This document shows positions 1 to 22,900 of a stretch of 64,000 bases of DNA, piece after piece. This DNA is from Macrostomum lignano. Its lineage: Eukaryota. The notes under the pieces are model-generated. The model searched no databases. It was not told the origin of the DNA and saw only the letters and a list, made by a program, of their open reading frames with translations. The stretch's first letter is position 1. Every line of letters begins with the position of its first letter. A program made the translations under genes and the position numbers. Location of the stretch: NCBI GenBank assembly GCA_002269645.1, contig NIVC01000551.1, forward strand, positions 434,001 to 498,000, given 5' to 3'.

Positions 1-15
1 TCCGTTTCATTGCAG

Positions 16-40
16 AGCTGTTGGCATCGACGCCAGCTCC
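16..40 (+). pseudogene. Truncated fragment of a type-B FN3 exon
   Basis: TTTCATTGCAG acceptor followed by AGCTGTTGGCATCGACGCCAGCTC, which matches the start of the 270-bp FN3 exons (AGCTGTTCGGCATTGACGCCAGCTC) with a 1-bp loss. The match then breaks off into Copia-like sequence. Confidence 0.7.
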
Positions 41-94
41 AATCGATGTGGTTTCCTTTATTTGCACCACTGTGAATCAGAGACAACAGTTCGT

Positions 95-400
95 TGCACA
101 TTGAACTCTCACCTTTCCCAAATGGTTTTTTGTGCATTTTGCCTTCCACGCATGCCTTACAAAATGAGATGCCGTCAGCCTGCATGCTGCTTTTATCCAT
201 TGCGATTCCTTCCACTATGCTTCCTCGAAACAGTGATTTCAGAGCTTGCTGCTCCATTAGCTACGGTGAATTCTTCGAGTTAGTAAAGCCTTCCAATTTT
301 CATGACGTCTCCAGCAACGTTTCCACTTTTGTCTACAATTTTATACAGTTTTGAAAACTGCACATTAAAGCTTTTTTCTTGTAACCGCTAATACTGAGAA
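95..400 (-). mobile_element. Ty1/Copia remnant, paralogous to 50468-51000
   Basis: Sequence such as CATTTTGCCTTCCACGCATGCCTTACAAAATGA is shared with 50.47-51.0 kb. That region encodes the Copia pre-integrase motif CKACVEGKM on the minus strand. Confidence 0.7.
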
Positions 401-638
401 CAAGTGTTGGTTTAACTAGCTAACATTATATCACACCACAGACCACACGACATGAAATAAATTATTGATTCGAAATGCTCACTGATTTTGAGAAACACTT
501 ATATTTCTACTTGCTAAAAAACAAACATTTGCTGTCATTAGATATTTATCAGGCAGGCATGCCCCGGTGTAAAATGATAATAAGACAAAAATTGGGACTT
601 TAAAGTTAGGAGCTGCCCACCCCCCCTCGCTACCGCAG

Positions 639-3180
639 AGCTCTTCCCGATTGACGCCAGCTTAGTGAGTTTCACCATCACAGAGACTTCCATCTCCCTG
701 ACTTGGGCTGCGTCCATCACTGAAGGAGTTCTGTACCGGGTGACCTGCAGGCGAGTCAGCACAGGGACGTCAACATCTCTGCCTCCATCAAAGTATCTGA
801 GTGCCAGCATCAGCAGTCTGCAGTCAGGAGAGGCCTACAACCTGAGTGTGGCTGTGACTAAGCAGGGCGGCTTCGATGAAGTTGTCACCTGGCTGCCAAT
901 CCAGCTGACCAGTGAGTTGGAGCTCAGCAAATGATTGCAGCTGCTCTCATGAGGCTCAGCTCGCTTCTATTGGGTCCGTTTCATTGCAGAGCTGTTCGGC
1001 ATTGACGCCAGCTCAGCTCAGTACAGCTCCAATGAGACCGCCATCTCTGTGACTTGGCAGCCATCCAGCACTTCTGGCGTCTCGTACCAGCTCACCTGCA
1101 AGCGAGTCGGCTCAGGTGAGGTCTCGACTGCGTCTTCATCCACTCCGTCTGGCACCTGCGGCTCCCTGCAGTCTGGACAGGAATATGAGCTGCGGGTGGC
1201 TGTGCAGAAGGCGGGCGGCTTTGATGACGTTATCACGGCTCTCTCCAACCAGCTGACCAGTGAGTGCTCGGCTGCTGCGGTGCCACAGTTTTTCCTGCAT
1301 GCATCTTATTAAACAATATTTACCTGAGCATAATCATTGATGCAGATGAATACTCGAAGGGCAGAGCAGCTGTGGCAAACGTTTTTGACTTCCACAATGT
1401 CGAAATTTTTAACTTGTCGGAATTATATCACTTATCAGTGACTGACTGACTGAGTTTCCTTGACTTCTTACTCTTCTTCTTACTTCTGACTCAGTAAATT
1501 GATTGCAGGCCTTCTTAAAAGCGACTGATATTTGCAGTCATTAGAAATTTATCAGGCAGTAGGAGGTCTCTGTATCGGATGATAATTTTGGCAAAAATTT
1601 GGGGCTATAAGTCAGGGGCTGCCCTACCCACAGATGGAAACAGAGGTTCATGTGCGACAGCAGACTGGCTGCAATTCAATGGCTTCTGCTACCTCCTGGT
1701 CAAGGGATCCAACGGACGAAACCTCACAGCGGCAGTTTCTGACTGTCAGAGACGAGACCCGTCTGCTCACCTGCTGTGGATCACATCTCAGTCGGAGATG
1801 AACTGGGTGATGGACTACTCAGCAAGGAACTGGAGACTCAGAGAAGACTACAGAGCTCAGTGCCAAGACTGCAGGTTTCAAGGAGACGCGGCCTGGACCG
1901 GACTGTACAGATACGAGGCAGACGGAGGGAAGTTCAAGTGGCTCAGAGACAACTCCAGCGTCAACGTCAGCATGTAAGCTCTTGTTGCAGGTGGCCTGGG
2001 ACACTCTGGGAAGCTACTGGAACATACCAGTTGCACGTGTTAGAGAATATTCAGTTATTCCCTACGAGTAGCTGCAGTTGAGACATTTGATTTGTTTCGC
2101 GTTTTTGAAAGCTACGAAAGCTGAACTTTATTCATCAAGGCATGGATAGGTTTGGGAAGTCAGGTATTCGTAGCAGGGGGCATAGCCAGGACTGCTTAAT
2201 AGTTGGCTTCCTCATCTAAGGAGCGCCAGCACCAGGGGCGCCAGCACCAGGGGCGCCAGCACCAGGGGCGCCAGCACCAGGGGCGCCAGCACCAGGGGCG
2301 CCAGCACCAGGGGCGCCAGCACCAGGGGCGCCAGCACCAGGGGCGCCAGCACCAGGGGCGCCAGCACCAGGGGCGCCAGCACCAGGGGCGCCAGCACCAG
2401 GGGCGCCAGCACCAGGGGCGCCAGCACCAGGGGCGCCAGCACCAGGGGCGCCAGCACCAGGGGCGCCAGCACCAGGGGCGCCAGCACCAGGGGCGCCAGC
2501 ACCAGAGGCGCCAGCACCAGGGGCGCCAGCACCAGAGGCGCCAGCACCAGGGGCGCCAGCACCAGGGGCGCCAGCACCAGGGGCGCCAGCACCATAGGCC
2601 CCATTTCCCTGAAGTGGGATTGGGAGGCAGCCCCATCCCTTCCAGCCGAAACCAAACCCCGTGTGACCAGGCATTCAAACAATAGCGATCAGTTGACAGT
2701 CATGGGTATCATGACTGGCACATGTCTCTCCTGTCATAGTTGGGTCATACGCCTTACATGTTGAATGCATTACGATCGGCTAAAGCATGCTTTCCATTCC
2801 GGCCGCCACTGCAGAAGCTGGCTAGTCGGTCCCAGCCGCCCGCCCATGAACTTCGGCTTGCTGTTCGACGCCCAGACCCGTCTGATGTGGCGCACCTACC
2901 AGCCTGAGGCGCGCCATTTTCACTTTTGCAAGGCGCCAGTGCGAGTCCAGCAGCCGGAGACAGCTGGGACTGATGCAGCTGATGCTGCTCAAGAGAAAAC
3001 CGTCAGGACCAGATGTCCATCAGCCGCCTGGTCCCCGATTTCTGGACGTCCCGGTGCCAGCCTACAGATGTGCTACATGAAACTCTATCCAGGAAGTTTT
3101 CCTCAAGCTCGAGAGGAGTGCCGCAGATGGGCGCCCAATGCTGACATCCTTCCGGCCAGAAGTCTGCACGGACTGTCTCG
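639..3180 (+). CDS. Partial FN3 + C-type lectin domain gene (gene 0). Exons 639-911, 990-1259, 1634-1973, 2815-3180; 5' and 3' ends not found
   Basis: Two FN3 exons (phase 1-1) splice in frame to 1634-1973 (phase 1-2), which reads WLQFNGFCYLLV...AVSDCQRRDPSAHLLWITSQSEMNWV...AWTGLY...KWLRDNS. That exon splices in frame to 2815-3180 (phase 2-2), which reads SWLVGPS...LMWRTYQPEARHFHFCK and then begins a second CTLD, CPSAAWSP...CYMKL...QAREECRRWAPNADIL. All junctions are GT-AG. Confidence 0.75.
2222..2594. repeat. 15-bp minisatellite (GGCGCCAGCACCAGG)n, about 25 copies, inside the CTLD intron
   Basis: Near-perfect tandem array with no unique spacers. Confidence 0.97.
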
Positions 3181-4513
3181 GTGAGCGAGCTGTAGGAATG
3201 CTCTTAGTTTCTGTGTACTTCTTGACTGTGACACGCTAAAATGTCTGTCGTCAGTCAGCCACAGCCACACACCGTTCTCTCCCGCCAAGCTTAGTGTCCG
3301 CAGGATGTTCTTTAATGGCTTTGTGAGGAATTTTACAACTCAAATCTTTATTTGTCTACTTTTCTCAGTAGTCTGAATTGAATCTTAAATGAAAATCGAC
3401 AGGTCAGTTTTAGGACGGTGATAAAGTCAAGTCCTCTTTACACCCTCTGTGATTGCATGCCTGCGTACTGGGGCAGGTGAATGGGTGCCTTCTGTGGTCT
3501 TCTGTGGTCCACAGAAGGATTGTTCTGAACCACTACTGAACCCATAATGAACCACTGCGTGCCTTCTGTGGTCTTTGATTTTGGGGAATTGCTCAAAGCC
3601 CTTCTTCATAGTAACAATTGCTACTTGCAATATAATCATACCTACAATAAATATAATTATTTTGGAGTGTATGCCGTTGAAATAAAAATAATATATAATT
3701 TTACCGTCTATCATATCAGTAGGAGGTCGCTTACACTACTAAAGATAAAACCATAAAGTAGTATACATCGAGCTTCCTCGATAATGCTATTCAAATGTTT
3801 CAACAGTATGACACAGATTTAAAGTTACTGCATACCCCAAGTTCGAATCTCTTGTTCAAGAACGCTTCAATGCTTCAACTTCACATTCAGAAGCTCGTAA
3901 TCATCACCCTTGAGAAGATTTGATCCAAGGGTCACTGAGAAGTTACCCTTGCACCGTTGGACTTTAGTAGTCCTTGAGCTTAACCCAAGAGTAAAAAAAC
4001 AAGTGAATTTATTTTTAAATGCGATGATGCCTAGTTATGAGTATGGTCAATGAAAAGCCATTCAATTGCCTTATATGCAGAGATATTTCGCGTCAATTTC
4101 GTAAATTAAAAAGTTTTTAAATCTCCCGCGTTTTAACTTTTCAGATTTGATCGAAGAATTCTGTTTTTGCACGTCTGCTACATCGCCAATAAGACAGGCA
4201 AGAGTGACAGTTGAGGAGCACAACTGCAAGACTTCAAAAATATTGTCTATTCGACTTCGTTGGTTAATTTTAAAAATGAATCAGACTTAAAACTGCTTCT
4301 TGTCATTGATTCCAAATTTTACACTATTCAATAACAAGTTGATTAAATCGTCTTCAATTTGTATGATTATTATGTCTAATATGGAAAGGTCTGATATATT
4401 TCGTGTCAGTCACCACTTCAAGCCACATCATTTGAGGTTTGCGTTCTCAAAAAAGTGGCCAGGATTCTGTAGTGCAAGTAATACCCATGAGGGCCAATCC
4501 CAAGGGACTCGGA

Positions 4514-4560
4514 CAAGGACCACTAGAAGGTACGGTGACGGTAACTTCTAGTGGTCCTTG
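4514..4560. other. Perfect 16-bp inverted repeat with a 15-nt loop
   Basis: CAAGGACCACTAGAAG (4514-4529) pairs with CTTCTAGTGGTCCTTG (4545-4560). Confidence 0.8.
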
Positions 4561-4817
4561 AACAACGGAGTATACATGCTAGGGTTCTGTACACATGTAA
4601 TACCCCCAGTTTTGTATTAATTGGGACTCTTAGTATTGCTACAAAAGATGTCTATCAATTTTCAAATTTGAGCAATCTGTAGACATGGGAGTTGGCAGAT
4701 GTCTGCCGCTTCTGTGGGTCAGAGAGGCTCAATTACAGTGTAAAGGGTAAGGTAGAGATGTTGGTGTTTTATTAGATTTTGAACTTTTTCGACTGATGCC
4801 TGCTGGCATCCTGGTTT

Positions 4818-5267
4818 TCAATTTAGCAGCCGGATTCTGGACTCAGAATGCAAAAAACCCAGTGTACAAGCCTGAGATGATGAGGATGTCATGTACACCC
4901 TGTGAGAGAGTGTGTTTGAGGTTTGTGCCTGCGAACAGTATATGCAATATAATGGGCAATCGCCTTCACCGCTAGCGTTTCGCCATCGCCAAGGACCATC
5001 TGGGACTCCTGCGAATATTTTGTGTTTATGTCTTACAATACGAGCGTACACTCGAAACTTGGCATCCAAGGCATTGCGCTCACCTTTGTGTTTAGTTATC
5101 GAGGGAGATCGATAGGTACCTGAAACTTCACATGGATACCTGGTCACAAGTTCAGGGACATAAAAAGCCGGAACTTCATTAGCAGCAAATGTATTGCTGT
5201 TTAGCACTACCATCACAATGGCTAATAAATAGTAGATATTCGCAGAAGACACGGCCCTTGTGCGCAC
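4818..5267 (-). CDS. Possible secreted or glycoprotein-like ORF (149 aa), unknown family, possibly a degenerate element gene
   Basis: N-terminal hydrophobic stretch IYYLLAIVMVVLNSNTFA resembles a signal peptide. The ORF has several Cys and non-repetitive composition. No family was recognised. Confidence 0.3.
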   Translation of the reverse strand: MRTRAVSSANIYYLLAIVMVVLNSNTFAANEVPAFYVPELVTRYPCEVSGTYRSPSITKHKGERNALDAKFRVYARIVRHKHKIFAGVPDGPWRWRNASGEGDCPLYCIYCSQAQTSNTLSHRVYMTSSSSQACTLGFLHSESRIRLLN

Positions 5268-7559
5268 ACGAGAGGGAGATGTGCCAACGGACTGTGGGGG
5301 TAAAGTTTGACAGCTTTCAGGTTAGCATGAAAAGCTTTGAACAAAAGCAAAAGTTCACCCTTGGCAAGGGAGTCAGCGCCAGCGGGTTCTGATCACCGCG
5401 CTCGTGGCTCCTCAGGCAGTTGCCCAGGAAAATCTGGCGTCTCTGGAGCAGGGTGACGCTAAGGGCCGGTACTCGAGCCCGCGAACCGCAGCAGAGACCT
5501 GTACAGTGCGTCCATCAACTGCTCTCGTGCTAGTCACGGGCACGGCTTCCCGTACACGAGAATCGAAGACGGAAAAGGCGCGCCTTCGGTCAGGTCAAGG
5601 GGAACCTGTCTTCCCAGTAAAAGATATGGGGACATGCCAATGCTTTGTCCCTACAGTCTACCACCACACCTTGTGACCCGTTATGGAAATAATGATGTAA
5701 CCACGCTCTGGTCGCGGGATATGGCAGGGGAAATTTTTCAAAAGTACCTCCGATCTCGGTGCACCCCCTGAGCAGAGCTGTCGAGACTGGGCCAGGTCTT
5801 TGACCAGGCCTGCTGACTCCCGCTCTGCTGCGCCTCCTGCTGCCTCGGCTCCGCCTCCCACCCCACCACACCAGCCTTTCCGGAGCCCCTATCCCCCTCT
5901 GCTCCCTCACCCGCTACTCTATTTCCTATGCGCTCTAGCCTATCTATTATGTACTTTTCCCCCCTTTCCCTCTTTTTCTTTCCTTTTGGACTGTTTTTCC
6001 TGCGCTGTCCCCCCTTCTTCCCGTGCCTACTCACAGTACTTTGTGCGCTCACCGCCTCCCCACCCCTTAGTAAACTCCCAAACGGTGACGCAAGCCTTGT
6101 GACCCCTCTTTCCCCTCGATGACTCATCGATGACTCACCACCCCTCTTGCGCAACCTTTCTTATGCTATTGTTCTCCTCCCCAAATTTCTCATGCGACAC
6201 CAACCCCACCTCCGCTTCTATTGTTCTCGTTTTTGGTTCTTTTGTTCTCCTTTTCGCACCCAATTATCACATTTCCCGGATTTTCTCTCGCTTTTGTTCT
6301 CGTTTTCGCACCCAATTGGCACCTTTTCTCCAATGTTTACTTTTCGATTGTTCTCGATTTTCCCAAATTATCCCAGTGTACAGATCTCCAAATAAGATAC
6401 AGAGTAAACTACTATAAGTAGTAACGTAAAAATGCGAAAATGCGAATCTAAAAATTCCGAGTTGTCATACACTATTTTAGAAGACCACGAAAACAACGAG
6501 TAATCATCTTATGTAACATCTAAAAATAGAATTCTAAATATGGTATTGATGCGCAAACCTGTTGTATTCTATTCAATTATCGAGAGGTCAAAATTCCAAA
6601 AAGCAAATGAGTCACCTTCCCAAAATAACCTGTTTACCCCAAAATTTTACTATAAATACAAGCTAAAATCCGAGCTAAAAATCTCAGACTCGGAGCAGCC
6701 TCTAAAGATCTTGGAGCTTGCTGGAACAGCTAAGCGAGGCTATATCTCTGAGAGAGAGATAAACCAATTGGTGAGCCGTTGCTCGAGCCTTTGTTATTGA
6801 TTTTGAGAGCGATTTATTGCCGGCCGCTACTGTCCAGTCGATTTGACTGAGTTCATTGAATTTGAGGCCTCCTATTTTCCTAAGGGATTGGATAGGATCT
6901 GCGGACCGATTCCGATACCCTTAGAGGATTATCGATTGATTGATTTTGGTTATCCTAGATTAACCGATAGGAGCACACGACTCCGATTCCGTTAGATCTA
7001 GAAGAAGACGCCCTTCTTGGAGGACCTCGTTGTTATTACAGAAAGTTGATTTTGTTATAAGGGCGCATCGTTGATATTCATTACTGAGTTTAAGGCCTAT
7101 ATTGATTTGCGTTCGAGAAATACTGCGACGTCGATTTAATTGTTACGCTCTCACCTTCGGCCGACTCTAGACTTCAAGAAGACCACCCCGGGAGGAACCG
7201 CTCTACGGAGACGAGTTCTACAGACGCGCACGACAAAGAAGAGGAGCCCGCAACAGTAAGTGATCACTGATTTTGTTCCCAGGCTTAGGGTCTGGAAGTG
7301 GGAGTTTTCGGGTGACTGATCACCTCCCGAATCAACTCTTCACCCGATTTCCATTTCCTTTGTTCCCGATCCCAGCCCTATTGTTCTCAATTTTGCTTGC
7401 GCAACACTTTCTCGACCTCCCGCTGTGCCAATTATCCCCACTACTAAGGGCCGGCAGATCCGGGCGTTTTGGAGGTGGGGTGGGTGTCAACCCTCCTCGC
7501 CTCTCATTGGCTGGCGCCCCGAGGTGATCGATACGCGTATCGATATCGGCGCTCGGCGC

Positions 7560-7930
7560 GCGCGCGCCGCAGGCGCGTGGCGCCAAGCGCCATCCAGCCG
7601 CAGGCGACCCTCCCCAGCCGCAGGCGACCCTACCGACATGTACCGATATGTATGCTCACCCTACCGACATGTACACCCTCCCGATATGTACCCCGATATG
7701 TATGCAGCAGGCGCCCAAACCGCAGGCACCCCGAGTGTACACTCTCCCAAGCCGCAGGCACCCGGGTGTACACTCTTCCATGCCGCAGGCACCCCGAGTG
7801 TACACTCTCCTCAGTACACTCTCCCAAGTACACTCTCCCCAGTACACTCTCCCTAGTACACTCTCCCGATATGTGTGTACACCGATATGTAGTCAACGAT
7901 ACGTACCCCGCAGGCACCCTATACCTCACG
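7560..7930. repeat. Dispersed repeat family with internal subrepeats, copy 1
   Basis: Subrepeats CGCAGGCGACCCT, CCGAYATGTA and GTACACTCTCCC. The same motifs occur in the same order at 10225-10560. Confidence 0.75.
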
Positions 7931-8030
7931 CCCTGCCCCACCTAGCCTCTTCCCCTCTCTCACCCACATCTCAACTAGCGAAATCGAACCCAGGTCGCGC
8001 CCATACTAGGCCACTACACGGTTTGGGGGT

Positions 8031-8229
8031 ATAGGGAGCGAGAAGTTTTAACCCTGATGTTGACGCAGCCCTGTACAGTGAGCGTGTACGGGCAGAGAGG
8101 GGTGGGGCGGACAGAGAACCAGCCACTAGGTTGTTATACTGTTGAAGCATAGGGAGCGAGAAGTTTTAACCCCGATGCTGACGCAGCCCTGTACAGTGAG
8201 CGTGTACGGGCAGAGAGGGGTGGGGCGGA
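8031..8229. repeat. Direct duplication of about 80 bp (offset 118 bp)
   Basis: ATAGGGAGCGAGAAGTTTTAACCC...GGGGTGGGGCGGA occurs at 8031-8111 and 8149-8229. Confidence 0.9.
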
Positions 8230-10224
8230 AAGAGATGTGAATAACACAGCCTGCTGCAGGAGCCGGATAGAGAGGCGCATGCTAGGACAGAGAGACAGTG
8301 TGAGTCACACACACCCCACAGAGAGAGCCGTACAGAGGATAGAGAGCTCCCTCCCCAGTTGCAGGGGACAGAGAGGCAGGCAGGGTATGCAGGGGCACGC
8401 GAACAGTCAAGGACCACGCGAGGATAGAGTGGAGGAGCAGAGATGTGTATGGACAGAGAGCTGGCCACTGGTGCGTAGTGTGAGGGAACAGAAACATATG
8501 GAGCAGGAGGGAGATAGGGAGCAAACGCGCTGGGTAAGGGAGCCACACAGGGCGGTACAGTGAGACACGGGCAGGGGTGGAGCCGTGCGTGGACAGAGCT
8601 GAACGGCATGGTCAGCTGCAGGAATAGGATGATAGAGAGGCGCGGAGAGGAGGGGACAGAGAGCAGTGTGCAGGGGTAGGCAGCCACGCAGGCAGGGGAA
8701 CAGAGAGGCGCGTGTCAGCCAGTTGCAGCCCGGGACAGAGAAGCGTGAAGGGGGGCCTGGGACAGAGTTCCGAGCAAGGCACAGAGAGGTAGGGTCCGGT
8801 AGCTATGTATAGACAAGGACCCACGCGAGGGCAGGACAGGGGAGTTGCATGCAAGGCCAGAGATGTGTGCGCGGAGGGAGACAGAGAGCAGTGTGTAGGG
8901 GTAGGTAACAGCAAACAATAGTAGATGGCGTGTGGGGACGGAGAAACCAGTCTGAGCGTACAGAGACGTTACAGAGAGGTACACAAACAGAGAACAAAGC
9001 GAGCAGAGCACATGTGTAGGGGCAGAGACGTGAGGGAGAATCGACCAAAACACGCTATGTATTATCAAAAGTTGGTTTTAGTGCAGCATATTTAATAGTG
9101 GTTAGTATAATAGTATGTACATAGTAGGTATAATAGTAGTAATAATAGTAAGTATATTAGCCCAAAAGGTAGGCTAAAACAGGCTAAACTGTGTGTACGC
9201 ATCCTCATCACCCCACAAGCCCCCTCTCCTGCCAGACTCACTCTTCCAAACCCTCCTGTATTGCTGTATGAAGGAAAATATAGTGTAAAAATACAGATCT
9301 TAACCGTCAGACCGCTGAAATCAGGGCACACTAGAGGGGGTTTCGGGGTCTGCATGCTCTATGTAAGCTGCTTGAGGAGGTTCCAAGGGCGTTGTGAGGG
9401 TTTCCATTATGTTTTGAAAAAAAACTAGGGGCTTAAATACAACGTTTTATTCAAAAGTAGGTTATTTTAATGAAATAGCTGCAGACACAATCATTGTCGA
9501 GAGTAGAAATTTTTATAAGAAACCATGCATTTTAGCAAAAATAAACCTTCAAACCACATAAAATTGAATAAAAAGCAGACATTTTCAATTATAAACCGCA
9601 AGTATTTTAATAGAAAAGTAAGCAAACAAAGCACAAAACCAGCAAATTTTACCTTTTTCATTTTAATGTTACTGATAAGGTAGAGAGTAGAAACTTGTGA
9701 GCTGTACGGAGTTAGAAAGTATTAGCCAATATGTATCGTATGAATTATTAGTTCAGCACCAGCCATTGGTCAAGCGAGCATTTATGAAGTTATTACGAGT
9801 GATGAAGGGATAGAGAGCTATATACAGGAAGACAGTATCCTTCTAAACCACCACGAACAGATTGCTAATAGAGATAAGCTTTGTCGGTAGGCAGTATGAG
9901 TAAGCGAAGGCGGGGTAAATACTTTTCCACATGCCAGACAGAACAGTATTGTGCTAGGATTTCTCTCGAAATCGCGGTACGTTATTAGTTTTTATCACAC
10001 CATCCAGATGCGTCAACGGGTCAACAGTAGTCATTTATATGTTATTAGACCTTACAAACCCAGGTCAGGTAAATATTACAAAGAGTATATTGTGTACACA
10101 CGCCAACTCCGAATACCAAGCCATACTAGTCTACTTGCAGTGCTCCTGGAGGGAAGGGATGGTCAAGAGTTACACACCAAGAATGCATTCACACAAAGAG
10201 TACACCACTCGAGACCTGTCCATG

Positions 10225-10560
10225 CGCCCCGATATGTATGACGCAGGCAACCCTCCCGACATGTATGCCGCAGGCGACCCTCCCGACATGTACCCAACAT
10301 GTATGTCGCAGGCGACCCCACCGACATGTACCCCGACATGTACACCCTACCTTATGGCACTCGAGCCACAGGTGCCAAGCGGCCCCCCGAAATGTACGCC
10401 GCGGGCGCCCCCTCCCGAGCCGAAGGTACACTCTTCCAATATGAGTGTACACTCTCCCAATACAAGTGTACACTCTCCCAATATGAGTGTACACTCTCCC
10501 AATATGAGTGTACACTCTCCCGATATGAGTGTACATCGATTTGTAGTCAACAATACCTAT
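10225..10560. repeat. Dispersed repeat family copy 2, with 20-bp GTGTACACTCTCCCAATATGA-like tandem units
   Basis: Homologous to 7560-7930, including the terminal TGTAGTCAAC(G/A)ATAC motif. Confidence 0.75.
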
Positions 10561-11840
10561 TAACACAAAATTAGGCTAGTGAAAACTACTTATAGTAGGT
10601 GAAATTGCGTATATTTACGTAAAAAGTAAGCAAAACACATATTAATCACATCAGTAGGTGTAAATATCAGGGCATAATACATATTACGAAACATATAGGC
10701 GTACGGACATATAGAATTAAGCATATGGGCAGCAAAAAACACACAATGTAGGTGCATTTTATCGATATTTTGGCAGAAAAGTAGGTGAAATAGACAAAAT
10801 AGTAGGTATAATACACAGAACCTACTCATTAGTGTAGTAGGCGCTTGTAGATGCTAGTATATTGTAAAACATAGGTTGAAATACACATACGCACAGTAGA
10901 TACAAGTATAATGCAGGTGCATATGCACACACTGTAGATTCGAATTATGTAGATGCATAGGCTAAAATACACACATCGTAGAGACAGAAGCAGGCATAAT
11001 GCAGGAAAATTATGATACATATTAGTGCGTAAAGTATCATATTATGACACGCTGTAGCACATATTGACATAATGCAGGGGAAAATATTGACAGAAATAGT
11101 ACACAATTGTAGAGGTAACAACCCGCCAACTAGTAAGGGCATCCAGCACTTGTTCAGGTTTTTATTATTTCGAGACGAGTGTCATGCCCCCGCAAGAGAT
11201 CTTATCAGAAATTTGTTGAACTCCACTGCAACTCTCCCCAGAGCCTCCAAATGCGAGTTTTTAACCCAGGGTCGAGTACAAAGGACCCGCCCACTCTTAA
11301 CCCCAAGGGGTGATCCTAGCGGAGACCAAGTACAGTGCGGACGGAGAGGGATAACAGAAAGCGCTGCACTGCACCAGACCGTGGGGCTGCATTCCTCCCC
11401 TGAGGTAGGCGCGTCAGCTCCCACTCCTCATTTAACCATCAAGTAAACTAAAGAAGTCAAGCAGAAAGCCTTACTATCACCCGCAGCCAGCACAAGTAAG
11501 AGTACTTTCCACTAGAGAGCTATAGTGCAAGATTCGCGAGCCAAGTTGAAGCACACCAAATTACACTAAAGACATATGTATTAAAAAGCATACCGGCACC
11601 TCTACAAAAACACAGTATGTACCGATTAAAGTTGCTTTTGGTGCAGTGTATTTAATAAAAAGCAGGTACCTAACACAAAAGTAGGCATCAATGCAGTGCA
11701 CGGACTAAACTGTATTTACAAACGCAGGGCAACGAACTACACACAATGTAGCGCATAGACATAATTGTACGCATAAATGTACGCAATTTCCGGTATATAG
11801 GACCACATGTACGCAAATGTACACAATGTACACAAACAAA

Positions 11841-11843
<3 letters not shown>

Positions 11844-11879
<36 letters not shown>
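11844..11879. repeat. (CA)n microsatellite
   Basis: Seen directly in the sequence. Confidence 0.97.
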
Positions 11880-11881
<2 letters not shown>

Positions 11882-12238
11882 AGGCGTATTCAGCAAGAGC
11901 TTCCTGCCGATGGCGCCATCGCCTGCGGAGAGAGAGAGAGAGAGAGAGTCATGGAAACGACCTTGGAGCGGCGGCTGGGAAGGCTATTTAAGGAATCGGT
12001 TTTCGGCAATGAGAATCCTCAGAAGCGTTACTACGCGTCCCTTCTCGTCCTACTGTGGACTCGCTGTCAGACACCGATCTGACCCATTCGTCTATAGGAC
12101 GAACCCCTGCCGGCCCGCGGTCTGTTACCGCCAAGCATCTTCAGCATCGCCTAAACTACATCAGCGCCTCGTCGCTTTAGCGCATCGCCACTTTACAGCC
12201 TGCCTGTCTACAGCCAACAGCCGCCCACGGTCACTCCG

Positions 12239-12273
<35 letters not shown>

Positions 12274-12919
12274 AGCTGCCGGTAAGTTCCTGTTACTAAT
12301 TTGTGCTCTAATTGCCTTTGCTTATTCGGGGTTTGCTTATTTCCCATTGCTTGATTAGAGAGCTGAGCCAATTGTGATACCGTATTACTTGCTGTATTTA
12401 TTCAATAGTGAAGCCGCCTAATTGTCTGATTACTTTGCCTAAGGGCCTAATCGTTAACTATTACTAAACTCCTCATTATTCACACTTTCACCATCATTTC
12501 ACTCATGGCTTGCTGAAGCCTTTCTCCCTGGGTGGCGAAGCATAAGGAAGTTTGGGCAAGCTAATGGCCTCTCCCCGTGCAAAGCCCGCCTGTGAGTGCG
12601 TGCTGCGGGTCCGAGTGTGCGTGCGGTAGAGGGGATTAGCGAGTCTTGGCACAGAATGGCAGTAGGAAGGTTGCAACCCCATGCTGACGCGTCCCTTCGC
12701 CCTGAGCAATCTAAACTGTAGACAGTACATGTTCGCCTCACACTACTCTTAGTAATCAAAGCCGCAAGTCAGCCTCGCTCACAGCCACAAAGGATCCCCT
12801 GCTGAGAAATCCTCTAGATTGAGCCCAGAGTTCCCGAGCATGCCCCAAGCAGAGTCCCTGTACTCGGCTGCATGTGTCTCCCTGTTAGCCTAAATCCCCT
12901 GGTAACCAATCCATGCGGG

Positions 12920-13272
12920 GCTCTAAAATGAGTGCCCCTGGCGCTAAAATGAGTGCCTGCGGCGCTAAAATGAGTGCCTGTAGCGCTAAAAGGAGTGCCT
13001 TTAGCGCTAAAATGAGTGCCTGTAGCGCTAAAATGTGTGCCTGCGGCGCTAAAATGAGTGCCTGTGGCGCTAAAATGAGTGCCTGTAGCGCTAAAATGTG
13101 TGCCTGCGGCGCTAAAATGAGTGCCTGTAGCGCTAAAATGAGTGCCTGTAGCGCTAAAATGAGTGCCTGTAGCGCTAAAATGAGTGCCTGCGGCGCTAAA
13201 ATGAGTGCCTGTAGCGCTAAAATGAGTGCCTGCAGCGCTAAAAAGAGTGCCTGTGGCACTAAAATGAGTGCT
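12920..13272. repeat. 21-bp minisatellite (GGCGCTAAAATGAGTGCCTGY)n, about 17 copies
   Basis: Tandem array that explains the spurious 7-aa-period ORFs here. Confidence 0.95.
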
Positions 13273-13826: not shown

Positions 13827-13964
13827 TGACTTTTCGAGAAAAAAATTGCTTTTTTACTTTAAGTCCTGTGGTCGGCTCAGCGTGCGTGAGTTTTACCTTT
13901 TCTCAAAAGCGAAAGTCCGCGTTAATTTTGACTGGATTTAATCAGATTGGCACAAACTCGCAAA

Positions 13965-16900: not shown

Positions 16901-19900
16901 AAAAATGAAAAACTATGGCGTCATCGCAGAATTTTTAAGGTAAATTTGCCGAATTCACATCGCTTAAACAAATTCGTGCATTGAAACTTTGCAGAGCTCT
17001 CTGGCATTGACGCCAGCTCAGCTCAGTACAGCTCCAATGAGACCGCTATCTCTGTGACTTGGCAGCCACCCAGCACTTCTGGCGTCTCGTACCAGCTCAC
17101 CTGCAAGCGAGTCGGCTCAGGTGAAGTCTCGACTGCGTCTTCATCCACTCCGTCTGCCACCTGCGGGTCCCTGACGTCTGGACAGGAATATGAGCTGCGG
17201 GTGGCTGTGCAGAAGGCGGGCGGTTTTGATGAAGTCATCACACGTCTGTCCAACCAGCTGACCAGTGAGTGCTCAGCTGCTGTGGTGCCTCTTTTACCTG
17301 CATGTATCTTGTTCAATAATATTTTCATACCTAGTCATAATAGTTGGTGCAGTTGAATACGCGAGGGGCAGAACAGCTCTGTGGTAAATGCTTCTGACTT
17401 TCACACCAAAAGGTTCACATCGTAAAAATTTCAATTTTCTAAAATTTCATCACCTCAAAAAGCGTGACTGAGTTCACCGTGACTGCTCAGATGCTGATCG
17501 AGTGCTCACTGCCCGTTGTTGCTTATCCGTGGTTTTGGTTTTTCCCACAAACTACCCCGGAATGTAAAGGCTTAGTACTACGTTGAGTATTTGCAATCAT
17601 GAGATACTTAGGAAAGAGGTAATAATCTGCGTATGGCAGTACAAAATTGTCTCTTGAGTTCGACATAGACAAATAAAGCTTTACTGTAAGACAGACAGCC
17701 ACAATGCGTCACATATTCAGCCATAACTTTTGAGGTAAGTAGCCAAGAAAGACGAATTATGACGCTTTAAGGTGAAACCAAAGATGCAGCTTTCAGCCTT
17801 CACGGAATGGGCCATAGGGCCAAAACTGCCACCTCTTTCTGAACACCCATTGAAGAAGCGAGAATACTCACTTACTTGCGCTGTACAAGTATATGGATTG
17901 CTGTGTGCTCAAAAGAAACTGATATTTGCAGTCAGTAGAGATTTATCAATCAGTTAGTGAAGGGGAGACAAACACTAAACAGGCACTGGGTTGCACCCCA
18001 TGGCCGAACTAACAAAAAGCGAATGAATGAGAGAATTTACAGAAAAAGGGTAAGGCAAGGGATAAGAGCAGAAATATAAACCCTGAAATCACATGTAAAA
18101 GCCCATCAAAGGCAATTCTCTTTAAAAGCATTAAATCTGCGGCAGCCACAGCATCACTTCGCCAGTCACCGACGCATTTCACCTCTTGAGCAGACAGCAC
18201 AAGAATAATGGGCCCAGGTAGCGCCTCCTCTGCACAGGCTGTGCGCTGAGAACGAGCGAGCGAGCGTCCTGCCCATCAGTTGCTAGGCAGCAGAGGATCC
18301 GCTCGCCAACTGATAGCAGAACAAGGGTTGCCAAGCTTTCTGATGCGAATGTGGCTCTCTAACGCAGACACCGGGCAAAGCGGGTGTCCTTCTTTTAGCC
18401 TTGGAAGCAACGCTCGGAGCAGCCTCGCGAAGGACTGGTTCTTCTTGCCATTAACTGACGGAGAGCACGACAACCTCCGGGTGGCGTTGAAAGGCTGAGA
18501 CGGAGATTGGCGAAGCGGACTGCTGACTGGGAAGGAGACTTGGAGCGCAGAAGCATCCCCCAAGAAGCAACCTGCGTCACAAGCCAGCAGACTCTATCAA
18601 GGGAACTGCTCGAATTAAGTCACTTCCTCGCAGACAACAACATCGCAGGCGAGATCGGCATCTTCCGTCTTGGTCGCTGGCACATCCTCCGTTTGGCGCC
18701 GTGAACGAGCAGTGAGACTAGGGGGTGTTTTGATAGATCCTCAGCACCAAAGGCTTTTAACCAGCTGGACAGTGCACTGATGTGAGTACGCAGACTGGTA
18801 AACGATCTCAGGTGGCATTTGACCAGATGAGTCGGGTGTCTCCGATTGAGTAGGGTTGGTCGCATTGAGACGGGTTGGTCGGATTGAGTCGGGTTGGTCG
18901 GATTGAGTCGGGTTGGTCGGATTGAGTCGGGTTGGTCGGATTGAGTCGAGTTGGTCGGATTGAGTCGGGTTGGTCGGATTGAGACGGGTTGGTCGGATTG
19001 AGTCGGGTTGGTCGGATTGAGTCGGGTTGGTCGGATTGAGTCGGGTTGGTCGGATTGAGTCGGGTTGGTCGGATTGAGTCGGGTTAGTCCTGCTCTTGTT
19101 GAGTAGCTACGCCAGGACCGGACGGCCGATGAGATCGCCCTACGTGACTGCGGAGCGTCTGTTCCAGCGAGGCCGGAGGCGGCGTTGCAGGGAGGCGCTT
19201 TGTGAAAAAAAATACGGGAGCCAAAAAGAGAAAACGCTTGATCCGAAACCTCCGGAAACAAGGCAATTTGCTGGCAGACGTGAAGCACAAATTCCGTTCT
19301 GACTCAAAAAATTCATTGACTGAGGCGCCAGGTGGCAGGCTGCAGTCGTGAATAAGGCGGATGGAAGACGAGTCTGCCTTAGCGACCGCACTAAGTGCAC
19401 TTCCGAAGAGCGGCCGATTGCCTGCTTGGCAGCGCCATTAGCGGTGCTGCTCAAGCTCCTGGCGCACCTGGGCCTCAATAGCTTGCTGGTGAAAAGTAAC
19501 AGATCTGTACAAAAGTAACGTTGTTAGAAATACAGAAGTCGTTCTTCAAACCATCGAGCACGAACCTGACTTGCTCCTCCGGCATCTCGGACCAGCCAAA
19601 CTGCAAAGACAAGACTGCTTGACAACTCTGTTGAACTCGGTCACTTGGGGTCGGGGGCGGTTCCACTGTCGTGGGGCACAGGAGGGTAACCCGACGATAG
19701 ACTCTGAGTTCTGTTCCTCAAATCACACGCTAGATTTTTGAAAGTTGACCCGAGTCTCCATCAGCGTGGTCTCGGGCTTCGGAGTGCGGCTGTGTGCATC
19801 TGCTTCACTGATGAGCTGTTGAAGTCGAAACAGACCCGTGGCTGCGTTCGCTTTTTAGACGCTGTTGCATTTATCATTTTTGTTGGTGCCATCAAATGTG

Positions 19901-22900
19901 TTGCCACCAGACCCAGGACTGTGCTGACAGCATTCCACCGCGTTCCGTCAAGCTGGAGAAGCCGAAACTCGTCATCATATGACATGACTTTTGTGCGATC
20001 GAAGACTAAATCTAGCAGGTCGGAGATGATCGATCAACTCGGAAGAATCGATTCTACCATCAACAACATGCAGCATTTGAACCTGTAATTTATGGCTCCT
20101 GGAGATAAAGTCGCCAAACAACAGGGACTCAGGCTTTACCACTGCAACAACAGACTGGATTCCTTGTCTCTGGTGACGCTCACTGATAAAATCAACCACT
20201 CTGTAAACCACCGGCGCATGAGCATGCGAAGCTTCAGCTCCTGTCTGCCCGAAAATACATTCGTTATACAAATCATGCCACTCACCGGGAGTCTGATCTC
20301 GTCAGACTCATTCTTTCGCGGCCGTCGCGCCACATTGGTGCGCTTCAGCGAGTTCTGCCTCGAGATCGAGATCCAGCAGCCGAATGCGCAGTTCAGTCTT
20401 CTGCAGCTGTTCCTCGACTCTGCCTCCCGTCGCCGCTCAACATTCAGCCGAAGCGCCCCCCGCCGGTTGCATCTCGCCCTCAGGTGAAGCCAGACTAATT
20501 AAATTTTGTGTGCCAGCATTCATTGGTGATATCTTGTCCTCTTGAGTACGACGGGATGAGCTTCTGTCCTGCTCCAACGTCTGCCACTCGAGCTCCTTGG
20601 CAATGCTACGTTTAAGGCGACTTGTCAGCTCTTTCTTATTGCCATTTGTAGGCAAGCCGCGCTCTCTAAGGGCTTCTCGAAGCGCTTTGTTTTTTGCGGG
20701 CAGTTCGAATACAAAGGTGTCTGCCATGATTCAGTAGTCAAAAAAATTAAAAATTAAACCTGAGCAAACGCTAGTAGCCACAAAGGTGGCGGTCTAAATA
20801 GACACACGGCGTGGACGACGCACTCACCACCCCACCACACAGCAAAAACCCAAACAGCCCCTGGCACTAAAGGCGGTTAGCAGTCTCTGTATCAGATTAT
20901 AACTCGAAAAAATCGGGACCTTTAAGTCAGGAGCTGCTCACCCACCTCGCAACCGCAGAGCTCTTCCCAATTGACGCCAGCTCAGTGAGTTTCACCATCA
21001 CAGAGACTTCCATCTCCCTGACTTGGGCGGCGTCCATCACTGAAGGAGTTCTGTACCGGGTGACCTACAGTCGAGTCAGCACAGGGAGTTCTTCATCTCT
21101 GCCTCCATCAAAGTATCTGAGTGCCACCGTCAGCGGTCTGCAGTCAGGAGAGGCCTATAACCTGAGTGTGGCTGTGAGTAAGCAGGGCGGCTTCCATGAA
21201 GTTGTCACCTGGCTGCCAATCCAGCTGACCAGTGAGTTGGAGCTCAGCAAATGATTGCAGCTGCTCTCATTAGGCACAACTCGCTTCTATTGGGTCCGTT
21301 TCATTGCAGAGCTGTTCGGCATTGACGCCAGCTCAGCTCAGTACAGCTCCAATGAGACCGCCATCTCTGTGACTTGGCAGCCATCCAGCACTTCTGGCGT
21401 CTCGTACCAGCTCACCTGCAAGCGAGTCGGCTCAGGTGAAGTCTCGACTGCGTCTTCATCGACTCCGTCTGGCACCTGCGGCTCCCTGCAGTCTGGACAG
21501 GCCTATGAACTGCGGGTGGCTGTGCAGAAGTCGGGCGGCTTTGATGACGTCATCACGCCTCTGTCTAACCAGCTGACCAGTGAGTTGGAGCTCAGTAAAT
21601 CATTGCAGCTGCTCTGATGAGGCACAGCTCGCTTCTATTGGGTCCGTTTCATTGCAGAGCTGTTCGGCATTGACGCCAGCTCAGCTCAGTACAGCTCCAA
21701 TGAGACCGCCATCTCTGTGACTTGGCAGCCATCCAGAACTTCTGGCGTCTCGTACCAGCTCACCTGCAAGCGAGTCGGCTCAGGAGAAGTCTCGACTGCG
21801 TTTTCATTTACTACGTCAGCCACATGCGGCTCCCTGCAGTCTGGACAGGAATATGAGCTGCAGGTGGCTGTGCAGAAGACGGACGGCTTTGGTGACGTCA
21901 TCACGGCTCTGTCCAATCAGCTGACCAGTGAGACTTGCATTTGTACTGACTTTAGTTACAGCCTGTTTTCAAATCAACTCTGAATGTGCTGGTACTTTCA
22001 CGGAATTCAGAGGACAGCGTTGCACCTGCGGTGTCCGGCCTGACGATTCTGCTAATCCCTGGCGGTCCCGTCCGCCTCAGCTGGAAGCCGCTCAGCCCCG
22101 AGCTCGGCCGGGGCGTCGTGTTCGAGTTCGAGCTGCGACTCGACGGTCCGGGCGGCTGCGCGGCGGCCCGGCGGCTGAACTGCTCCGACTGCGGCCGCCA
22201 CCGCCTCCAGCTGCAGTCGGAGGAGGCCCGGCAGCGGCTCGAGGCCCTGACGGCCGACTGCTCAGCGCCGGTGCTCGTGCGGACTTTCGAGTTCGGCGAC
22301 GCCTCGCTGTCCGCGGAGGTCGCCGTCAGCTCCGAGGGCGCCTCCCCGCGCTCGCTGCTGCCCTGGACCGAGTACGGCGCCTCGCTGTGGCCGGTGAACC
22401 TCGCGGGGCCCGGCGCCGCCGCCTCCGCCTCCTTCCGCAGCCCGGAGACTCGCAGCGGCGCCGTCGGCGGCCTGCAGGCGACGCCCTCGGAGGCGGAGGC
22501 GCTGGTGGAGTTCGAGGAGCCGCGGCTGCCAAACGGCCTGCTGCAGGCGTTCGCTGTGCATGTGAGAATCACGAGTACTTTGATTGAGGCTACTGAATGG
22601 TTCATTTCGCACGAGGCATTTCATGACATTCCGCAGGTGTTCAATGTGGCTTCTAATGTCTGCTCGCAGCTGCTGGTGCTGAACTCCACCAACGCCGGCT
22701 GCCAGTTGCCCTCCTGCACAACGGGAGGCTTTCTGGACCTGCTGTCCAGGACGTGCGCCAGCACCCAGTACGTCAACAACAGCGCGAACGGCTCAGATGC
22801 GTACGCCGTCAGAGTGCGGCAGCTGCAGCCGGGCACCGAGTACTCGGTGAGGGTGACGCCGGTCAGCCAGACTTTAGCTGGAGACTCAGCTGAGCTCAAA

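What the first reader, a model, noticed from the sequence alone, without database searches (positions are those of the whole stretch)
1260..3180. Exon shuffling apparently caught in the act: C-type lectin exons occupy an FN3 exon slot
Seen: the intron before the lectin exon (ATTTGCAGTCATTAGAAATTTATCAGGCAG..GTCTCTGTATCGGATGATAA..AAGTCAGGGGCTGCCCTACCCACAG) is homologous to the intron before type-A FN3 exons (GTCTCTGTATCAGATTATAA..AAGTCAGGAGCTGCTCACCCACCTCGCAACCGCAG at about 20881-20958). Homology stops within about 10 nt of the acceptor, and the lectin exon starts in the same phase 1. The result is an in-frame FN3-FN3-CTLD-CTLD(partial) product. Established: CTLDs are common carbohydrate or pattern-recognition modules. 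Inference: the family acquires new ligand-binding modules by recombination at shared intron sequence, which fits a recognition function.
Basis: partly seen in the sequence, partly recalled or inferred. Interest (0 to 1): 0.75.

Follow-up and report, generated by a model that had tools for sequence, protein, structure and literature searches.

The report
Flatworm FN3 receptor–lectin fusion gene
The window holds the 3' half of an already annotated Macrostomum lignano gene in which the front of a tandem-array fibronectin-III receptor gene is spliced in frame onto exons of a divergent C-type-lectin-like gene: a real but older, fixed gene fusion, not shuffling in progress.

Summary
Intron 1260-1633 is homologous along its length to the family's "type B to type A" FN3 introns. 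Homology ends 2-4 nt before the acceptor, and exon 1634-1973 starts in phase 1.

The window is M. lignano scaffold NIVC01000551.1. Splicing 639-911, 990-1259, 1634-1973, 2815-3180 and 4145-4214 onto two upstream exons reproduces GenBank protein PAA81093.1 (BOX15_Mlig011792g1) at 651/651 residues. That annotation was built from RNA-seq. Three assembly copies carry the same junction.

Pfam Lectin_C misses the domain. A family profile hits 82 solved structures, and the 60 listed are all C-type lectin-like domains. The domain lacks the sugar/Ca motifs and one canonical disulfide.

- The lectin exons run phase 1 to 2, then 2 to 2, so they are not a 1-1 module. They replace the gene's whole 3' end; no downstream FN3 or transmembrane exons remain.
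- The shared intron belongs to the recipient only. The closest lectin loci do not carry it.
- The break probably lies inside donor linker-coding sequence (1627-1633) and uses a cryptic AG.
- The event predates a three-fold duplication. The lectin exon shows purifying selection.

This is a new, well-resolved example of a known process.

The parts
15..45 (+). Remnant of a type-B FN3 exon (B'). It keeps the acceptor, has a 1-nt deletion and is truncated after about 30 nt. The annotated transcript skips it.
   Evidence: 1-39 matches all B-exon starts at 92-95% with a gap; sequence comparison; the same remnant is in L001 at 11146-11190.
46..638 (+). Rest of the intron between exon C (left of the window) and exon A. 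Its 3' end, 527-622, is the paralogue of 1530-1629.
639..911 (+). FN3 exon type A, 273 nt, phase 1-1.
   Evidence: (Pfam fn3 7.8e-14 for A+B).
990..1259 (+). FN3 exon type B, 270 nt, phase 1-1. It is the last FN3 exon of the fusion gene.
1260..1633 (+). Intron of FN3-family origin: a compact, colinear homologue of the B-to-A introns of paralogues.
   Evidence: It is 98% identical in L001 and 97% in L004.
1627..1633 (+). Inferred 5' breakpoint. FN3-intron homology runs to about 1631. Lectin linker-coding homology is plausible from CCC at 1627-1629 and is clearest from the G at 1633. The AG at 1632-1633 serves as the acceptor.
   Evidence: Reading through gives P-T-D-G-N-R-G-S-C. L002 in-exon linkers read Q-P-D-G-N-Q-G-S-C and G-P-N-E-N-E-G-S-C. 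This is an inference.
1634..1973 (+). Lectin exon L1: the first two thirds of a divergent C-type lectin-like domain. Phase 1 in, phase 2 out.
1974..2814 (+). Intron L1-L2. It carries a 15-nt minisatellite (AGGGGCGCCAGCACC, 25 copies) at 2219-2594. The counterpart intron is about 86 nt in the P0008 gene and 1.8 kb in L001.
2815..3180 (+). Lectin exon L2: the last third of CTLD1, a linker, and the first 55 or so residues of a second, degenerate CTLD. Phase 2 in, phase 2 out.
4145..4214 (+). Terminal coding exon (RFDRRILFLHVCYIANKTGKSDS, stop at 4212-4214). Origin unknown. It has no transmembrane segment.
20883..20958 (+). Comparator: the 3' end of the B-to-A intron of paralogue gene 2, followed by type-A exon 20959-21231.
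17265..17954 (+). Comparator: the 5' and middle parts of the same gene-2 intron. 17265-17405 and 17888-17954 match 1260-1396 and 1493-1560.

Best explanation
Window 1-4214 is the 3' part of Macrostomum lignano gene BOX15_Mlig011792g1 (PAA81093.1, 651 aa). It is the leftmost member of a tandem array of FN3 type-I receptor genes.

The gene is a fusion. Its 5' half comes from an array-type FN3 gene: a signal-peptide/FN3 exon and exon C (both just left of the window), a dead B' remnant, exon A, exon B, and the complete B-to-A intron. Its 3' half comes from a member of a flatworm family of multi-CTLD genes: L1, L2 and a short terminal exon.

One DNA rearrangement joined the last few nucleotides of the FN3 intron's pyrimidine tract to linker-coding sequence just upstream of a CTLD, possibly through a CCC(A) microhomology. 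Most simply this was a deletion or unequal exchange between an FN3 gene and a same-strand lectin gene. An AG inside the donor's Thr-Asp codons now serves as the acceptor. It happens to split a codon after its first base, so the phase-1 FN3 donor reads straight into the CTLD.

Everything downstream in the parent FN3 architecture was lost: further FN3 exons, E8, the transmembrane exon and the tail. The predicted product is therefore a secreted protein: signal peptide, four FN3 domains, one CTLD, a stub and a short tail.

The fusion predates the three-fold duplication of this region, is transcribed, and has been kept under purifying selection in at least part of its history.

Shown: the gene structure, the identity to the annotated CDS, the intron homology, the CTLD relationship, the three copies, and the selection statistics.
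Inferred: the exact breakpoint, the direction of the event, the single-step mechanism, and secretion.
For: - Identity of the locus. The window equals L003 from position 11144, that is NIVC01000551.1. The spliced exons reproduce P0025 at 651/651 residues.
- Transcript basis. The Mlig_3_7 GenBank annotation derives from StringTie/TACO assemblies of RNA-seq plus a de novo transcriptome, with TransDecoder ORFs (PMC5730564). Two UniProt-only models (P0026, P0027) have the same 'NQLT|NGNRGSC' junction.
- Three copies. Three contigs share the junction 'gctgccc(t/c)(a/c)cccacag|ATGGA'.
- Recipient side. The intron is colinear with the B-to-A introns. Gene 2 gives a clean 10-exon, 1030-aa FN3-transmembrane ORF that shows the parent architecture. 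Its E8, E9 and E10 homologues are present in genes 2-5 but absent after 3180.
- Donor side. L002 carries five L1-type copies at 86-88% nt identity, in a multi-CTLD gene and in the P0008 gene. P0012 has six such domains plus a transmembrane segment.
- Breakpoint. Coding-like similarity continues upstream of the AG.
- CTLD. PDB profile hits.
- Selection. L1 against the consensus of the L002 copies: dS 0.41, dN 0.058, omega 0.14, p 2e-6. After the fusion, L001 against L004 in the lectin part: omega 0.14, p 0.001.
- No independent expression. The first ATG of L1 is out of the CTLD frame and opens a 55-codon ORF. The CTLD also has no signal peptide of its own.
Against: - No RNA reads were examined here. 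Transcript support is second-hand, through the annotation method. The B exons are highly repeated, which can mislead assemblers.
- The window's own copy shows weak constraint: omega is 0.49-0.59 against the other two copies and is not significantly below 1. Exons are no better conserved than introns between copies.
- The breakpoint-in-exon reading rests on 2-3 codons of similarity.
- The direct donor was not found, so the event cannot be dated precisely.
- The second CTLD is truncated and the tail exon has no detectable relatives, which would also fit a decaying fragment.
- P0008-P0011 already have an FN3-CTLD architecture, so an alternative history exists (see the rivals).
Confidence: 0.65

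Rival explanations
1. Classical modular exon shuffling. Donor and recipient share intron sequence, homologous recombination within it dropped a lectin module into an FN3 exon slot, and the family does this repeatedly to gain binding modules.
For: - The intron homology is real and ends at the acceptor.
- The recipient intron and L1 are both phase 1.
- A second FN3-CTLD gene family (P0008-P0011) exists in the same species.
Against: - The closest L1 exons in L002 have either an unrelated upstream intron or no intron at all.
- L1+L2 is a phase 1-to-2 unit, not a symmetric module.
- No FN3 sequence resumes downstream, so nothing was inserted into a slot.
- Only one such junction type is seen in the window among 19 full-length FN3 exons.
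Confidence: 0.08
2. FN3-CTLD is the ancestral architecture, shared with the P0008-type genes. Gene 1 is the old member of the array. Its FN3 exons were homogenised with neighbouring array genes by gene conversion, or the array genes arose from it by replacing the lectin end with FN3/transmembrane exons. On this reading the lectin exons were never captured at this locus.
For: - P0008-P0011 have the same order: signal peptide, FN3, C, FN3, then CTLD.
- Their L1 is 79-81% identical in protein to the window's, but their FN3 part is only about 49% identical to the array type. That asymmetry is expected if the FN3 exons are converted by neighbours.
- Gene 1 lies at the edge of the array. Its pre-L1 intron is the most diverged of the B-to-A introns (76-79%, against 85-89% between the pre-A introns compared).
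Against: - P0008's pre-L1 intron shows no homology, and its L1 exon starts 27 nt further 5'.
- Sequence just upstream of the window's AG looks like lectin linker coding sequence truncated by the junction.
- Gene 1's signal-peptide exon and exon C are also array-type (about 86-90% to gene 2, against visibly low similarity to P0008, by eye). Conversion would have to cover the entire 5' half, non-repeated exons included.
Confidence: 0.15
3. The junction is a rearrangement scar at the edge of a highly unstable tandem array. The chimeric transcript is tolerated noise and the product has no function: an expressed pseudogene or proto-gene.
For: - There is a broken B' exon just upstream.
- The second CTLD is truncated, there is no transmembrane segment, and the tail exon has no relatives.
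- Omega is 0.5-0.6 for the window copy, and exon identity is about equal to intron identity between copies.
- Gene 5 shows a similar mid-exon truncation at 51616, so breakage is common here.
Against: - The 651-codon ORF is intact in all three copies despite 2-7% divergence.
- Omega is 0.14 (p 0.001) between L001 and L004 in the lectin part.
- All splice sites are conserved.
- The gene passed the expression filter of the annotation.
Confidence: 0.1
4. Assembly or annotation artefact: a chimeric contig, or a mis-joined transcript model among near-identical FN3 exons.
For: The region is repeat-rich. The assembly is known to be redundant (PMC5730564).
Against: - Three separate contigs are colinear across the junction and for about 10 kb on either side.
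- Two further UniProt-only models carry the same junction.
- The junction lies in unique sequence, with L1 on one side.
Confidence: 0.02

Closest known systems
Chimeric fusion genes formed by DNA-level joining of two parent genes (textbook examples from memory: Drosophila jingwei, primate TRIM5-CypA)
   Same: The 5' exons of one gene, supplying promoter and signal peptide, are spliced in frame to 3' exons of an unrelated gene. Both parents are still recognisable, and the breakpoint is readable in the intron.
   Different: This case is not a retroposition, because the captured part keeps its own introns. The acceptor appears to be a cryptic AG inside former coding sequence. The parent is a member of a tandem array.
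Phase-1 modular exon shuffling of extracellular domains (Patthy's 1-1 module rule; established knowledge)
   Same: The recipient FN3 exons are perfect 1-1 modules. The new domain enters through a phase-1 intron. FN3 and CTLD are both classic mobile extracellular modules.
   Different: The captured unit is phase 1-to-2, split by an internal phase-2 intron. It ends the protein instead of being intercalated. The donor-side break is probably in an exon, not an intron.
C-type lectin-like domains of the CD302 / DEC-205 / CLEC4 type (solved structures)
   Same: These are the best sequence and profile matches. Shared features are the long-form N-terminal Cys pair, the WxGL core motif, and the C1 and C4 cysteines.
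   Different: Pfam Lectin_C does not reach E<=0.1-1. The C2-C3 disulfide, EPN/QPD and WND are absent. There is an extra conserved CxxC after helix 2 (alignment A2). Close relatives at E<=1e-10 number only nine 50%-identity clusters. Those named by a source are all M. lignano; the origin of the rest was not determined.
R3-type receptor tyrosine phosphatase ectodomains (DEP-1/PTPRJ-like FN3 arrays)
   Same: There are Pfam Fn3_Dep-1_3rd hits. Paralogue P0004, on a contig of identical length to the window's (587,392 bp), has the same signal-peptide/FN3 start and E8 region followed by a Y_phosphatase domain.
   Different: The window's complete genes (2-4) end in a 49-residue tail after the transmembrane segment and have no phosphatase domain. 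The fusion gene has neither a transmembrane segment nor a phosphatase domain.
M. lignano P0008-P0011 proteins (BOX15_Mlig027029g1 and relatives)
   Same: They have the same order: signal peptide, FN3, C-type FN3, FN3, CTLD. Their L1 is 79-81% identical in protein and 86-88% in DNA.
   Different: Their FN3 part is only about 49% identical. They have a different, unrelated intron before L1, and an L1 exon that is 27 nt longer at its 5' end. They carry several CTLDs with mucin-like linkers, and P0008 has a transmembrane segment.

Membership tests
C-type lectin-like domain (CTLD) superfamily | Match to Pfam PF00059 Lectin_C at or above the gathering score | tested here: not met
   No hit at E<=1 for the L1/L2 products or P0001. 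No hit at E<=0.1 for P0012 (six repeats), P0008, P0010 or P0025.
C-type lectin-like domain (CTLD) superfamily | Significant sequence or profile similarity to experimentally solved CTLDs over the domain | tested here: met
   phmmer: DEC-205 at 1.7e-5 and CD302 at 0.017; 13 of 14 hits are CTLDs. Profile A2: 82 chains at E<=0.01, the 60 best listed all CTLDs, CD302 at 3.2e-8, and CEL-I aligned over positions 4-151.
C-type lectin-like domain (CTLD) superfamily | Conserved cysteine framework (C0-C0' long form, C1-C4, C2-C3) and the WIGL motif | tested here: inconclusive
   In alignment A2 C0/C0' (SC...FCY), C1 (DC), C4 (FCK) and WxGL (WTGL) are invariant or present. The C2-C3 pair is absent. An extra invariant CxxC follows helix 2.
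C-type lectin-like domain (CTLD) superfamily | CTLD fold in a 3-D model | tested here: inconclusive
   The AlphaFold2 model of P0005 with a 7-sequence alignment has pLDDT 21-47 across the lectin part, so no fold search was run.
Ca-dependent carbohydrate-binding C-type lectins (true CRDs) | EPN or QPD motif plus WND motif at Ca site 2 | tested here: not met
   The corresponding region reads W-L-V-G-P-S-R-P-P-M-N ... L-M-W-R-T-Y-Q-P. None of the nine aligned domains has either motif.
Fibronectin type III domain | Pfam PF00041 above the gathering score | tested here: met
   Exons A+B: 52.1 bits against a cut-off of 25, E 7.8e-14. P0025: 85.5 bits.
Modular (1-1) exon shuffling | The transferred module is bounded by introns of the same phase as the recipient intron | tested here: not met
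   L1 is phase 1 in and 2 out. L2 is 2 in and 2 out. The terminal exon starts in phase 2.
Modular (1-1) exon shuffling | Both breakpoints lie in introns, and recipient exons continue downstream of the insert | tested here: not met
   No FN3-family homology anywhere in 1634-13721. The 5' break probably lies in donor coding linker sequence.
Chimeric fusion gene | Two identifiable parent gene families joined in one open reading frame with canonical splice sites | tested here: met
Chimeric fusion gene | Transcript that joins the two parts | not testable with these tools
   No read data are available here. Indirect support only: the CDS equals a GenBank model that came from an RNA-seq-based pipeline (PMC5730564).

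The most novel reading that the evidence does not exclude
FN3 receptor arrays in Macrostomum repeatedly and independently capture CTLD exons: once in the P0008 lineage and once in the BOX15_Mlig011792/022912 lineage. This would be a standing mechanism for diversifying a recognition-receptor repertoire. Junctions would be made by microhomology between intron pyrimidine tracts and Thr/Pro-rich linker coding sequence, which readily supplies cryptic AG acceptors. The neighbouring full-length receptors carry a YxxV-x9-YxxI tail that resembles an immunoreceptor tyrosine motif.
Probability: 0.12. Interest if true: 0.6.

Novelty: new member of a known kind. Interest (0 to 1): 0.33.

Why it matters
Cases of domain shuffling in which both parents, the recipient intron and the breakpoint can still be read to within a few nucleotides are uncommon. 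They are useful for teaching and for testing how new multidomain extracellular proteins arise.

This one suggests a route that differs from the textbook intron-intron model: an intron-to-exon junction rescued by a cryptic acceptor. It also converts a membrane receptor into a probably secreted FN3-CTLD protein.

It flags a flatworm-expanded CTLD subfamily that Pfam's Lectin_C model misses, so lectin counts based on that model would omit it.

Beyond that it is an ordinary, already annotated hypothetical gene.

Tried and rejected
- Pfam Lectin_C on the spliced product, the single exons, P0001, P0012, P0008, P0010 and P0025: no hit. I replaced this test with PDB sequence and profile searches.
- The first protein search with the lectin part returned only P0001 and missed P0005, P0008 and others, which suggests the word index is patchy. 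The chimeric models surfaced only through the FN3 query and the exhaustive search.
- P0001 has no contig on record, so its gene structure could not be used.
I did not work around this. I used the contiguous L1 translation and the database protein P0005 instead.
- The AlphaFold model was too poor in the lectin region, so I skipped the fold search.
- I looked for a remnant of the donor's last (transmembrane) exon after 3180, and for similarity of the tail exon to P0008's last exon. Nothing rose above noise. An apparent 'FxRR' resemblance seen by eye was rejected.
- I looked for lectin or FN3 remnants in the 10 kb upstream of the gene in L003 and L001. There were none, which argues against the idea that an FN3 fragment was inserted into a lectin gene.
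- MAFFT's alignment of 'AACAG|AG' (1640-1646) to the A-exon acceptor is a chance 5-mer. That acceptor would be out of frame.
- dN/dS between the window and L001 alone has too few substitutions to decide.
- A literature search for the gene identifier Mlig022912 (the L001 paralogue; the window's own identifier, Mlig011792, was not searched) found nothing. A search for Macrostomum with C-type lectin and exon shuffling returned no title pointing to this gene among the 10 listed.
Full report
**What the window is.** The sequence is eukaryotic. Protein searches with its exons return only Macrostomum lignano proteins. Looking up P0025 returned locus L003, which is NIVC01000551.1 positions 422858-448214 of assembly GCA_002269645.1. 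The window is identical to L003 from position 11144 onward, so it starts at about 434,001 of that scaffold.

**Layout of the window.** The window holds a tandem array of FN3 genes. A complete model of gene 2 (13965-23502) has 10 exons with canonical sites and an open 1030-codon frame. It reads: signal peptide plus FN3, exon 'C', B, B, A, B, B, a GC-rich exon E8, an FN3/transmembrane exon, and a 49-residue tail.
- Genes 3 (24712-32915) and 4 (34648-44197) are variants of gene 2.
- Gene 5 (from 45930) is rearranged.
- All A and B exons are 270-273 nt and phase 1-1.

**The finding itself.** At the left edge, exon A (639-911) and exon B (990-1259) are followed by intron 1260-1633. Then come an exon at 1634-1973 and another at 2815-3180, whose joined translation is open and in frame with A and B.

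The intron is homologous to the B-to-A introns of the paralogues in three colinear blocks:
- 1260-1396 with 17265-17405, 78-79%, E about 1e-28;
- 1493-1560 with 17888-17954, 79%;
- 1530-1631 with 527-622, 20883-20945, 30646-30712, 41580-41646 and 51125-51190, 72-78%, E down to 1e-10.

In the multiple alignment the similarity runs to 'gctgccctacccac', 2 nt before the AG. From 1634 to 13721 nothing resembles the rest of the array.

**It is an annotated, transcript-derived gene.** The FN3 query returned P0005 (BOX15_Mlig022912g1), whose sequence runs signal peptide, FN3, C, A, B, L1, L2 and a 23-residue tail. Its 90% cluster holds two more GenBank proteins and two UniProt-only models.

I joined two exons just left of the window (L003 10001-10397 and 10650-10889) to window exons 639-911, 990-1259, 1634-1973, 2815-3180 and 4145-4214. 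This reproduces P0025 (PAA81093.1, BOX15_Mlig011792g1) at 651 of 651 residues. The 'missing exon after 3180' is thus 4145-4214.

The paper describing this assembly states that the GenBank annotation is a filtered genome-guided transcriptome. It was built with StringTie and TACO from RNA-seq plus a mapped de novo assembly, with ORFs called by TransDecoder (PMC5730564). That is indirect but real evidence that the FN3 and lectin exons are joined in RNA. I could not inspect reads.

**Three copies.** The loci of P0005 (L001, NIVC01001416.1) and P0024 (L004, NIVC01000905.1) are colinear with the window.
- Window positions 248-13983 align to L001 at 92-97%.
- The B-L1 intron is 98% identical in L001 and 97% in L004.
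- The junction sequence is the same in all three, apart from two point differences in L004.

The assembly is known to contain large duplicated blocks. The fusion therefore predates this triplication. It is not 'in the act'.

**Is it a CTLD?** Pfam Lectin_C finds nothing, even in a six-repeat relative. phmmer of the spliced domain against PDB sequences finds DEC-205 (1.7e-5), CD302, CLEC4D and snake-venom C-type lectin-like proteins. A profile of nine domains (alignment A2) finds 82 chains at E<=0.01. The 60 listed are all C-type lectin-like domains, with CD302 best at 3.2e-8.
- Present: the long-form Cys pair, C1, C4 and WxGL.
- Absent: the C2-C3 pair, EPN/QPD and WND.
- Extra: an invariant CxxC.

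The AlphaFold model was too weak to use. My verdict is a divergent CTLD subfamily that is probably not a classical Ca-dependent sugar binder.

**Where the lectin exons came from.** The exhaustive search with L1 found 15 clusters at E<=1e-3. Among them are P0012 (signal peptide, six such domains, a transmembrane segment) and the M. lignano proteins P0008-P0011, which themselves begin with signal peptide, FN3, C and FN3, and continue with CTLDs.

The P0008 locus (L002, NIVC01000479.1) carries five L1-type copies at 86-88% nt identity, spread over a multi-CTLD gene and the P0008 gene. It also has an L2-type match at 81%. Two differences from the window matter:
- P0008's intron before L1 has no similarity to the window's intron.
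- P0008's L1 exon begins 27 nt further 5'. The other copies have no intron there at all; they are preceded by Thr/Pro-rich linker codons.

**The breakpoint.** Reading the window upstream of the AG in the CTLD frame gives ...P-T-D|G-N-R-G-S-C. The in-exon linkers in L002 read Q-P-D-G-N-Q-G-S-C and G-P-N-E-N-E-G-S-C. FN3-intron homology reaches about 1631, and lectin homology plausibly starts at CCC (1627-1629).

I infer a break within 1627-1633, inside former coding sequence, perhaps at a CCC(A) microhomology. The AG of the codons ACA-GAT then serves as a new acceptor. Because that G is the first base of a codon, the site is phase 1 and the fusion is in frame. This rests on few positions and is the least secure step.

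**Why this is fusion rather than a slot insertion.** L1 is phase 1 to 2, L2 is 2 to 2, and the last exon starts in phase 2. The unit could not be followed by a phase-1 FN3 exon. In fact no FN3, E8, transmembrane or tail homology follows it. There are no lectin or FN3 remnants in the 10 kb upstream of the gene either.

The simplest history is one deletion or unequal exchange that joined the 5' half of an array gene to the 3' part of a same-strand lectin gene. The product lacks a transmembrane segment, so it is predicted to be secreted.

L1 could not express the CTLD alone. Its first ATG is in another frame and opens a 55-codon ORF, and there is no signal peptide.

**Selection and age.**
- Window L1 against the consensus of the L002 copies: dS 0.41, dN 0.058, omega 0.14, p 2e-6. 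This is similar to the values among the L002 copies themselves.
- After the fusion, the lectin part gives omega 0.14 (p 0.001) between L001 and L004, but 0.49-0.59 (not significant) for pairs that include the window copy.
- Exon and intron identities between copies are similar.
- All three ORFs are intact.
- The pre-L1 intron is 21-24% diverged from the other B-to-A introns, and the copies are 2-7% apart.

The event lies somewhere between those two bounds.

**Rivals.** The main alternative is that FN3-CTLD is ancestral, as in the P0008 type, and that gene 1's FN3 half has been homogenised by its neighbours. The contrast between 79-81% identity in the CTLD and 49% in the FN3 part fits this. The unrelated P0008 intron, the shorter L1 and the coding-like bases before the AG argue against it. 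I give it 0.15.

**Verdict.** This is a genuine, neatly resolved chimeric gene and an ordinary kind of event. It is already present in GenBank as a hypothetical protein. I found no publication describing it, on a limited search.

Noticed in passing
window 13965-23502, 24712-32915, 34648-44197, 45930 to about 58000: There are four further FN3 type-I receptor genes in tandem. Units 13953-24036 and 34636-44730 are 96.5% identical over 10.1 kb. Gene 2 gives a clean 1030-aa ORF. Its cytoplasmic tail carries 'DYAMV-x9-EYVEI', two YxxV/I motifs spaced like an immunoreceptor tyrosine motif.
   Followed up: partly
window 51566-51616 and 15-45: Two type-B exons are truncated at almost the same internal position (...CTCCAATGAGACC| and ...CTCCAAT|). 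One is in gene 5 and one is at the window's left edge. The sequences after each break differ. This may be a recurrent fragile site or a shared older rearrangement.
   Followed up: partly
window 22011-22561, 31440-31988, 42722-43270, 55632-56183: Exon E8 is GC-rich (read by eye; not computed) and is 94.6-98.4% identical in protein among the genes. That is more conserved than the tail exon (88%) and, in genes 3 and 4, than the transmembrane exon (95%). The same region occurs in P0004, a 1238-aa paralogue with a tyrosine-phosphatase domain. That links the array to R3-type receptor phosphatases. No phosphatase exons were found in the window.
   Followed up: partly
window 20440-20727, minus strand (inside the 3.7-kb B-to-A intron of gene 2): A 95-codon ORF has a significant SAP domain (Pfam PF02037, E 3.2e-8). 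It lies in sequence absent from the compact intron 1260-1633, and is probably part of an inserted element.
   Followed up: partly
window 2219-2594; L002 22030-22713: A 15-nt minisatellite (AGGGGCGCCAGCACC, 25 copies, 98% matches) sits in the L1-L2 intron. The same repeat family occurs at an unrelated locus. Total intron length differs between the gene copies (0.84 kb here, 1.8 kb in L001).
   Followed up: no
window 12923-13271, 18828-19089, 33251-33880, 44533-45162, 52891-54043, 54422-55032, 56916-57394, 59827-60348, 61323-62267: There are many long minisatellite arrays with periods of 12-32 nt. One is a 17-mer of 68 copies at 99% identity. These arrays make up a noticeable share of the window (not quantified here).
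   Followed up: no
window 5400-10600: This is low-complexity sequence with strong strand asymmetry: GC skew -0.20 and then +0.25, AT skew +0.22. It contains no convincing ORFs and is 97% conserved in L001. It fills most of the 9.5 kb between the fusion gene and gene 2.
   Followed up: no
proteins P0001 and P0011 (M. lignano UniProt models): Several older gene models of the lectin family read stretches of the L1 exon in the wrong frame, for example 'SATFWSRDPTEES' and 'LTVRDETRLLT'. This points to indel errors or pseudogenes in the earlier assembly. Such models should not be used for domain counts.
   Followed up: partly
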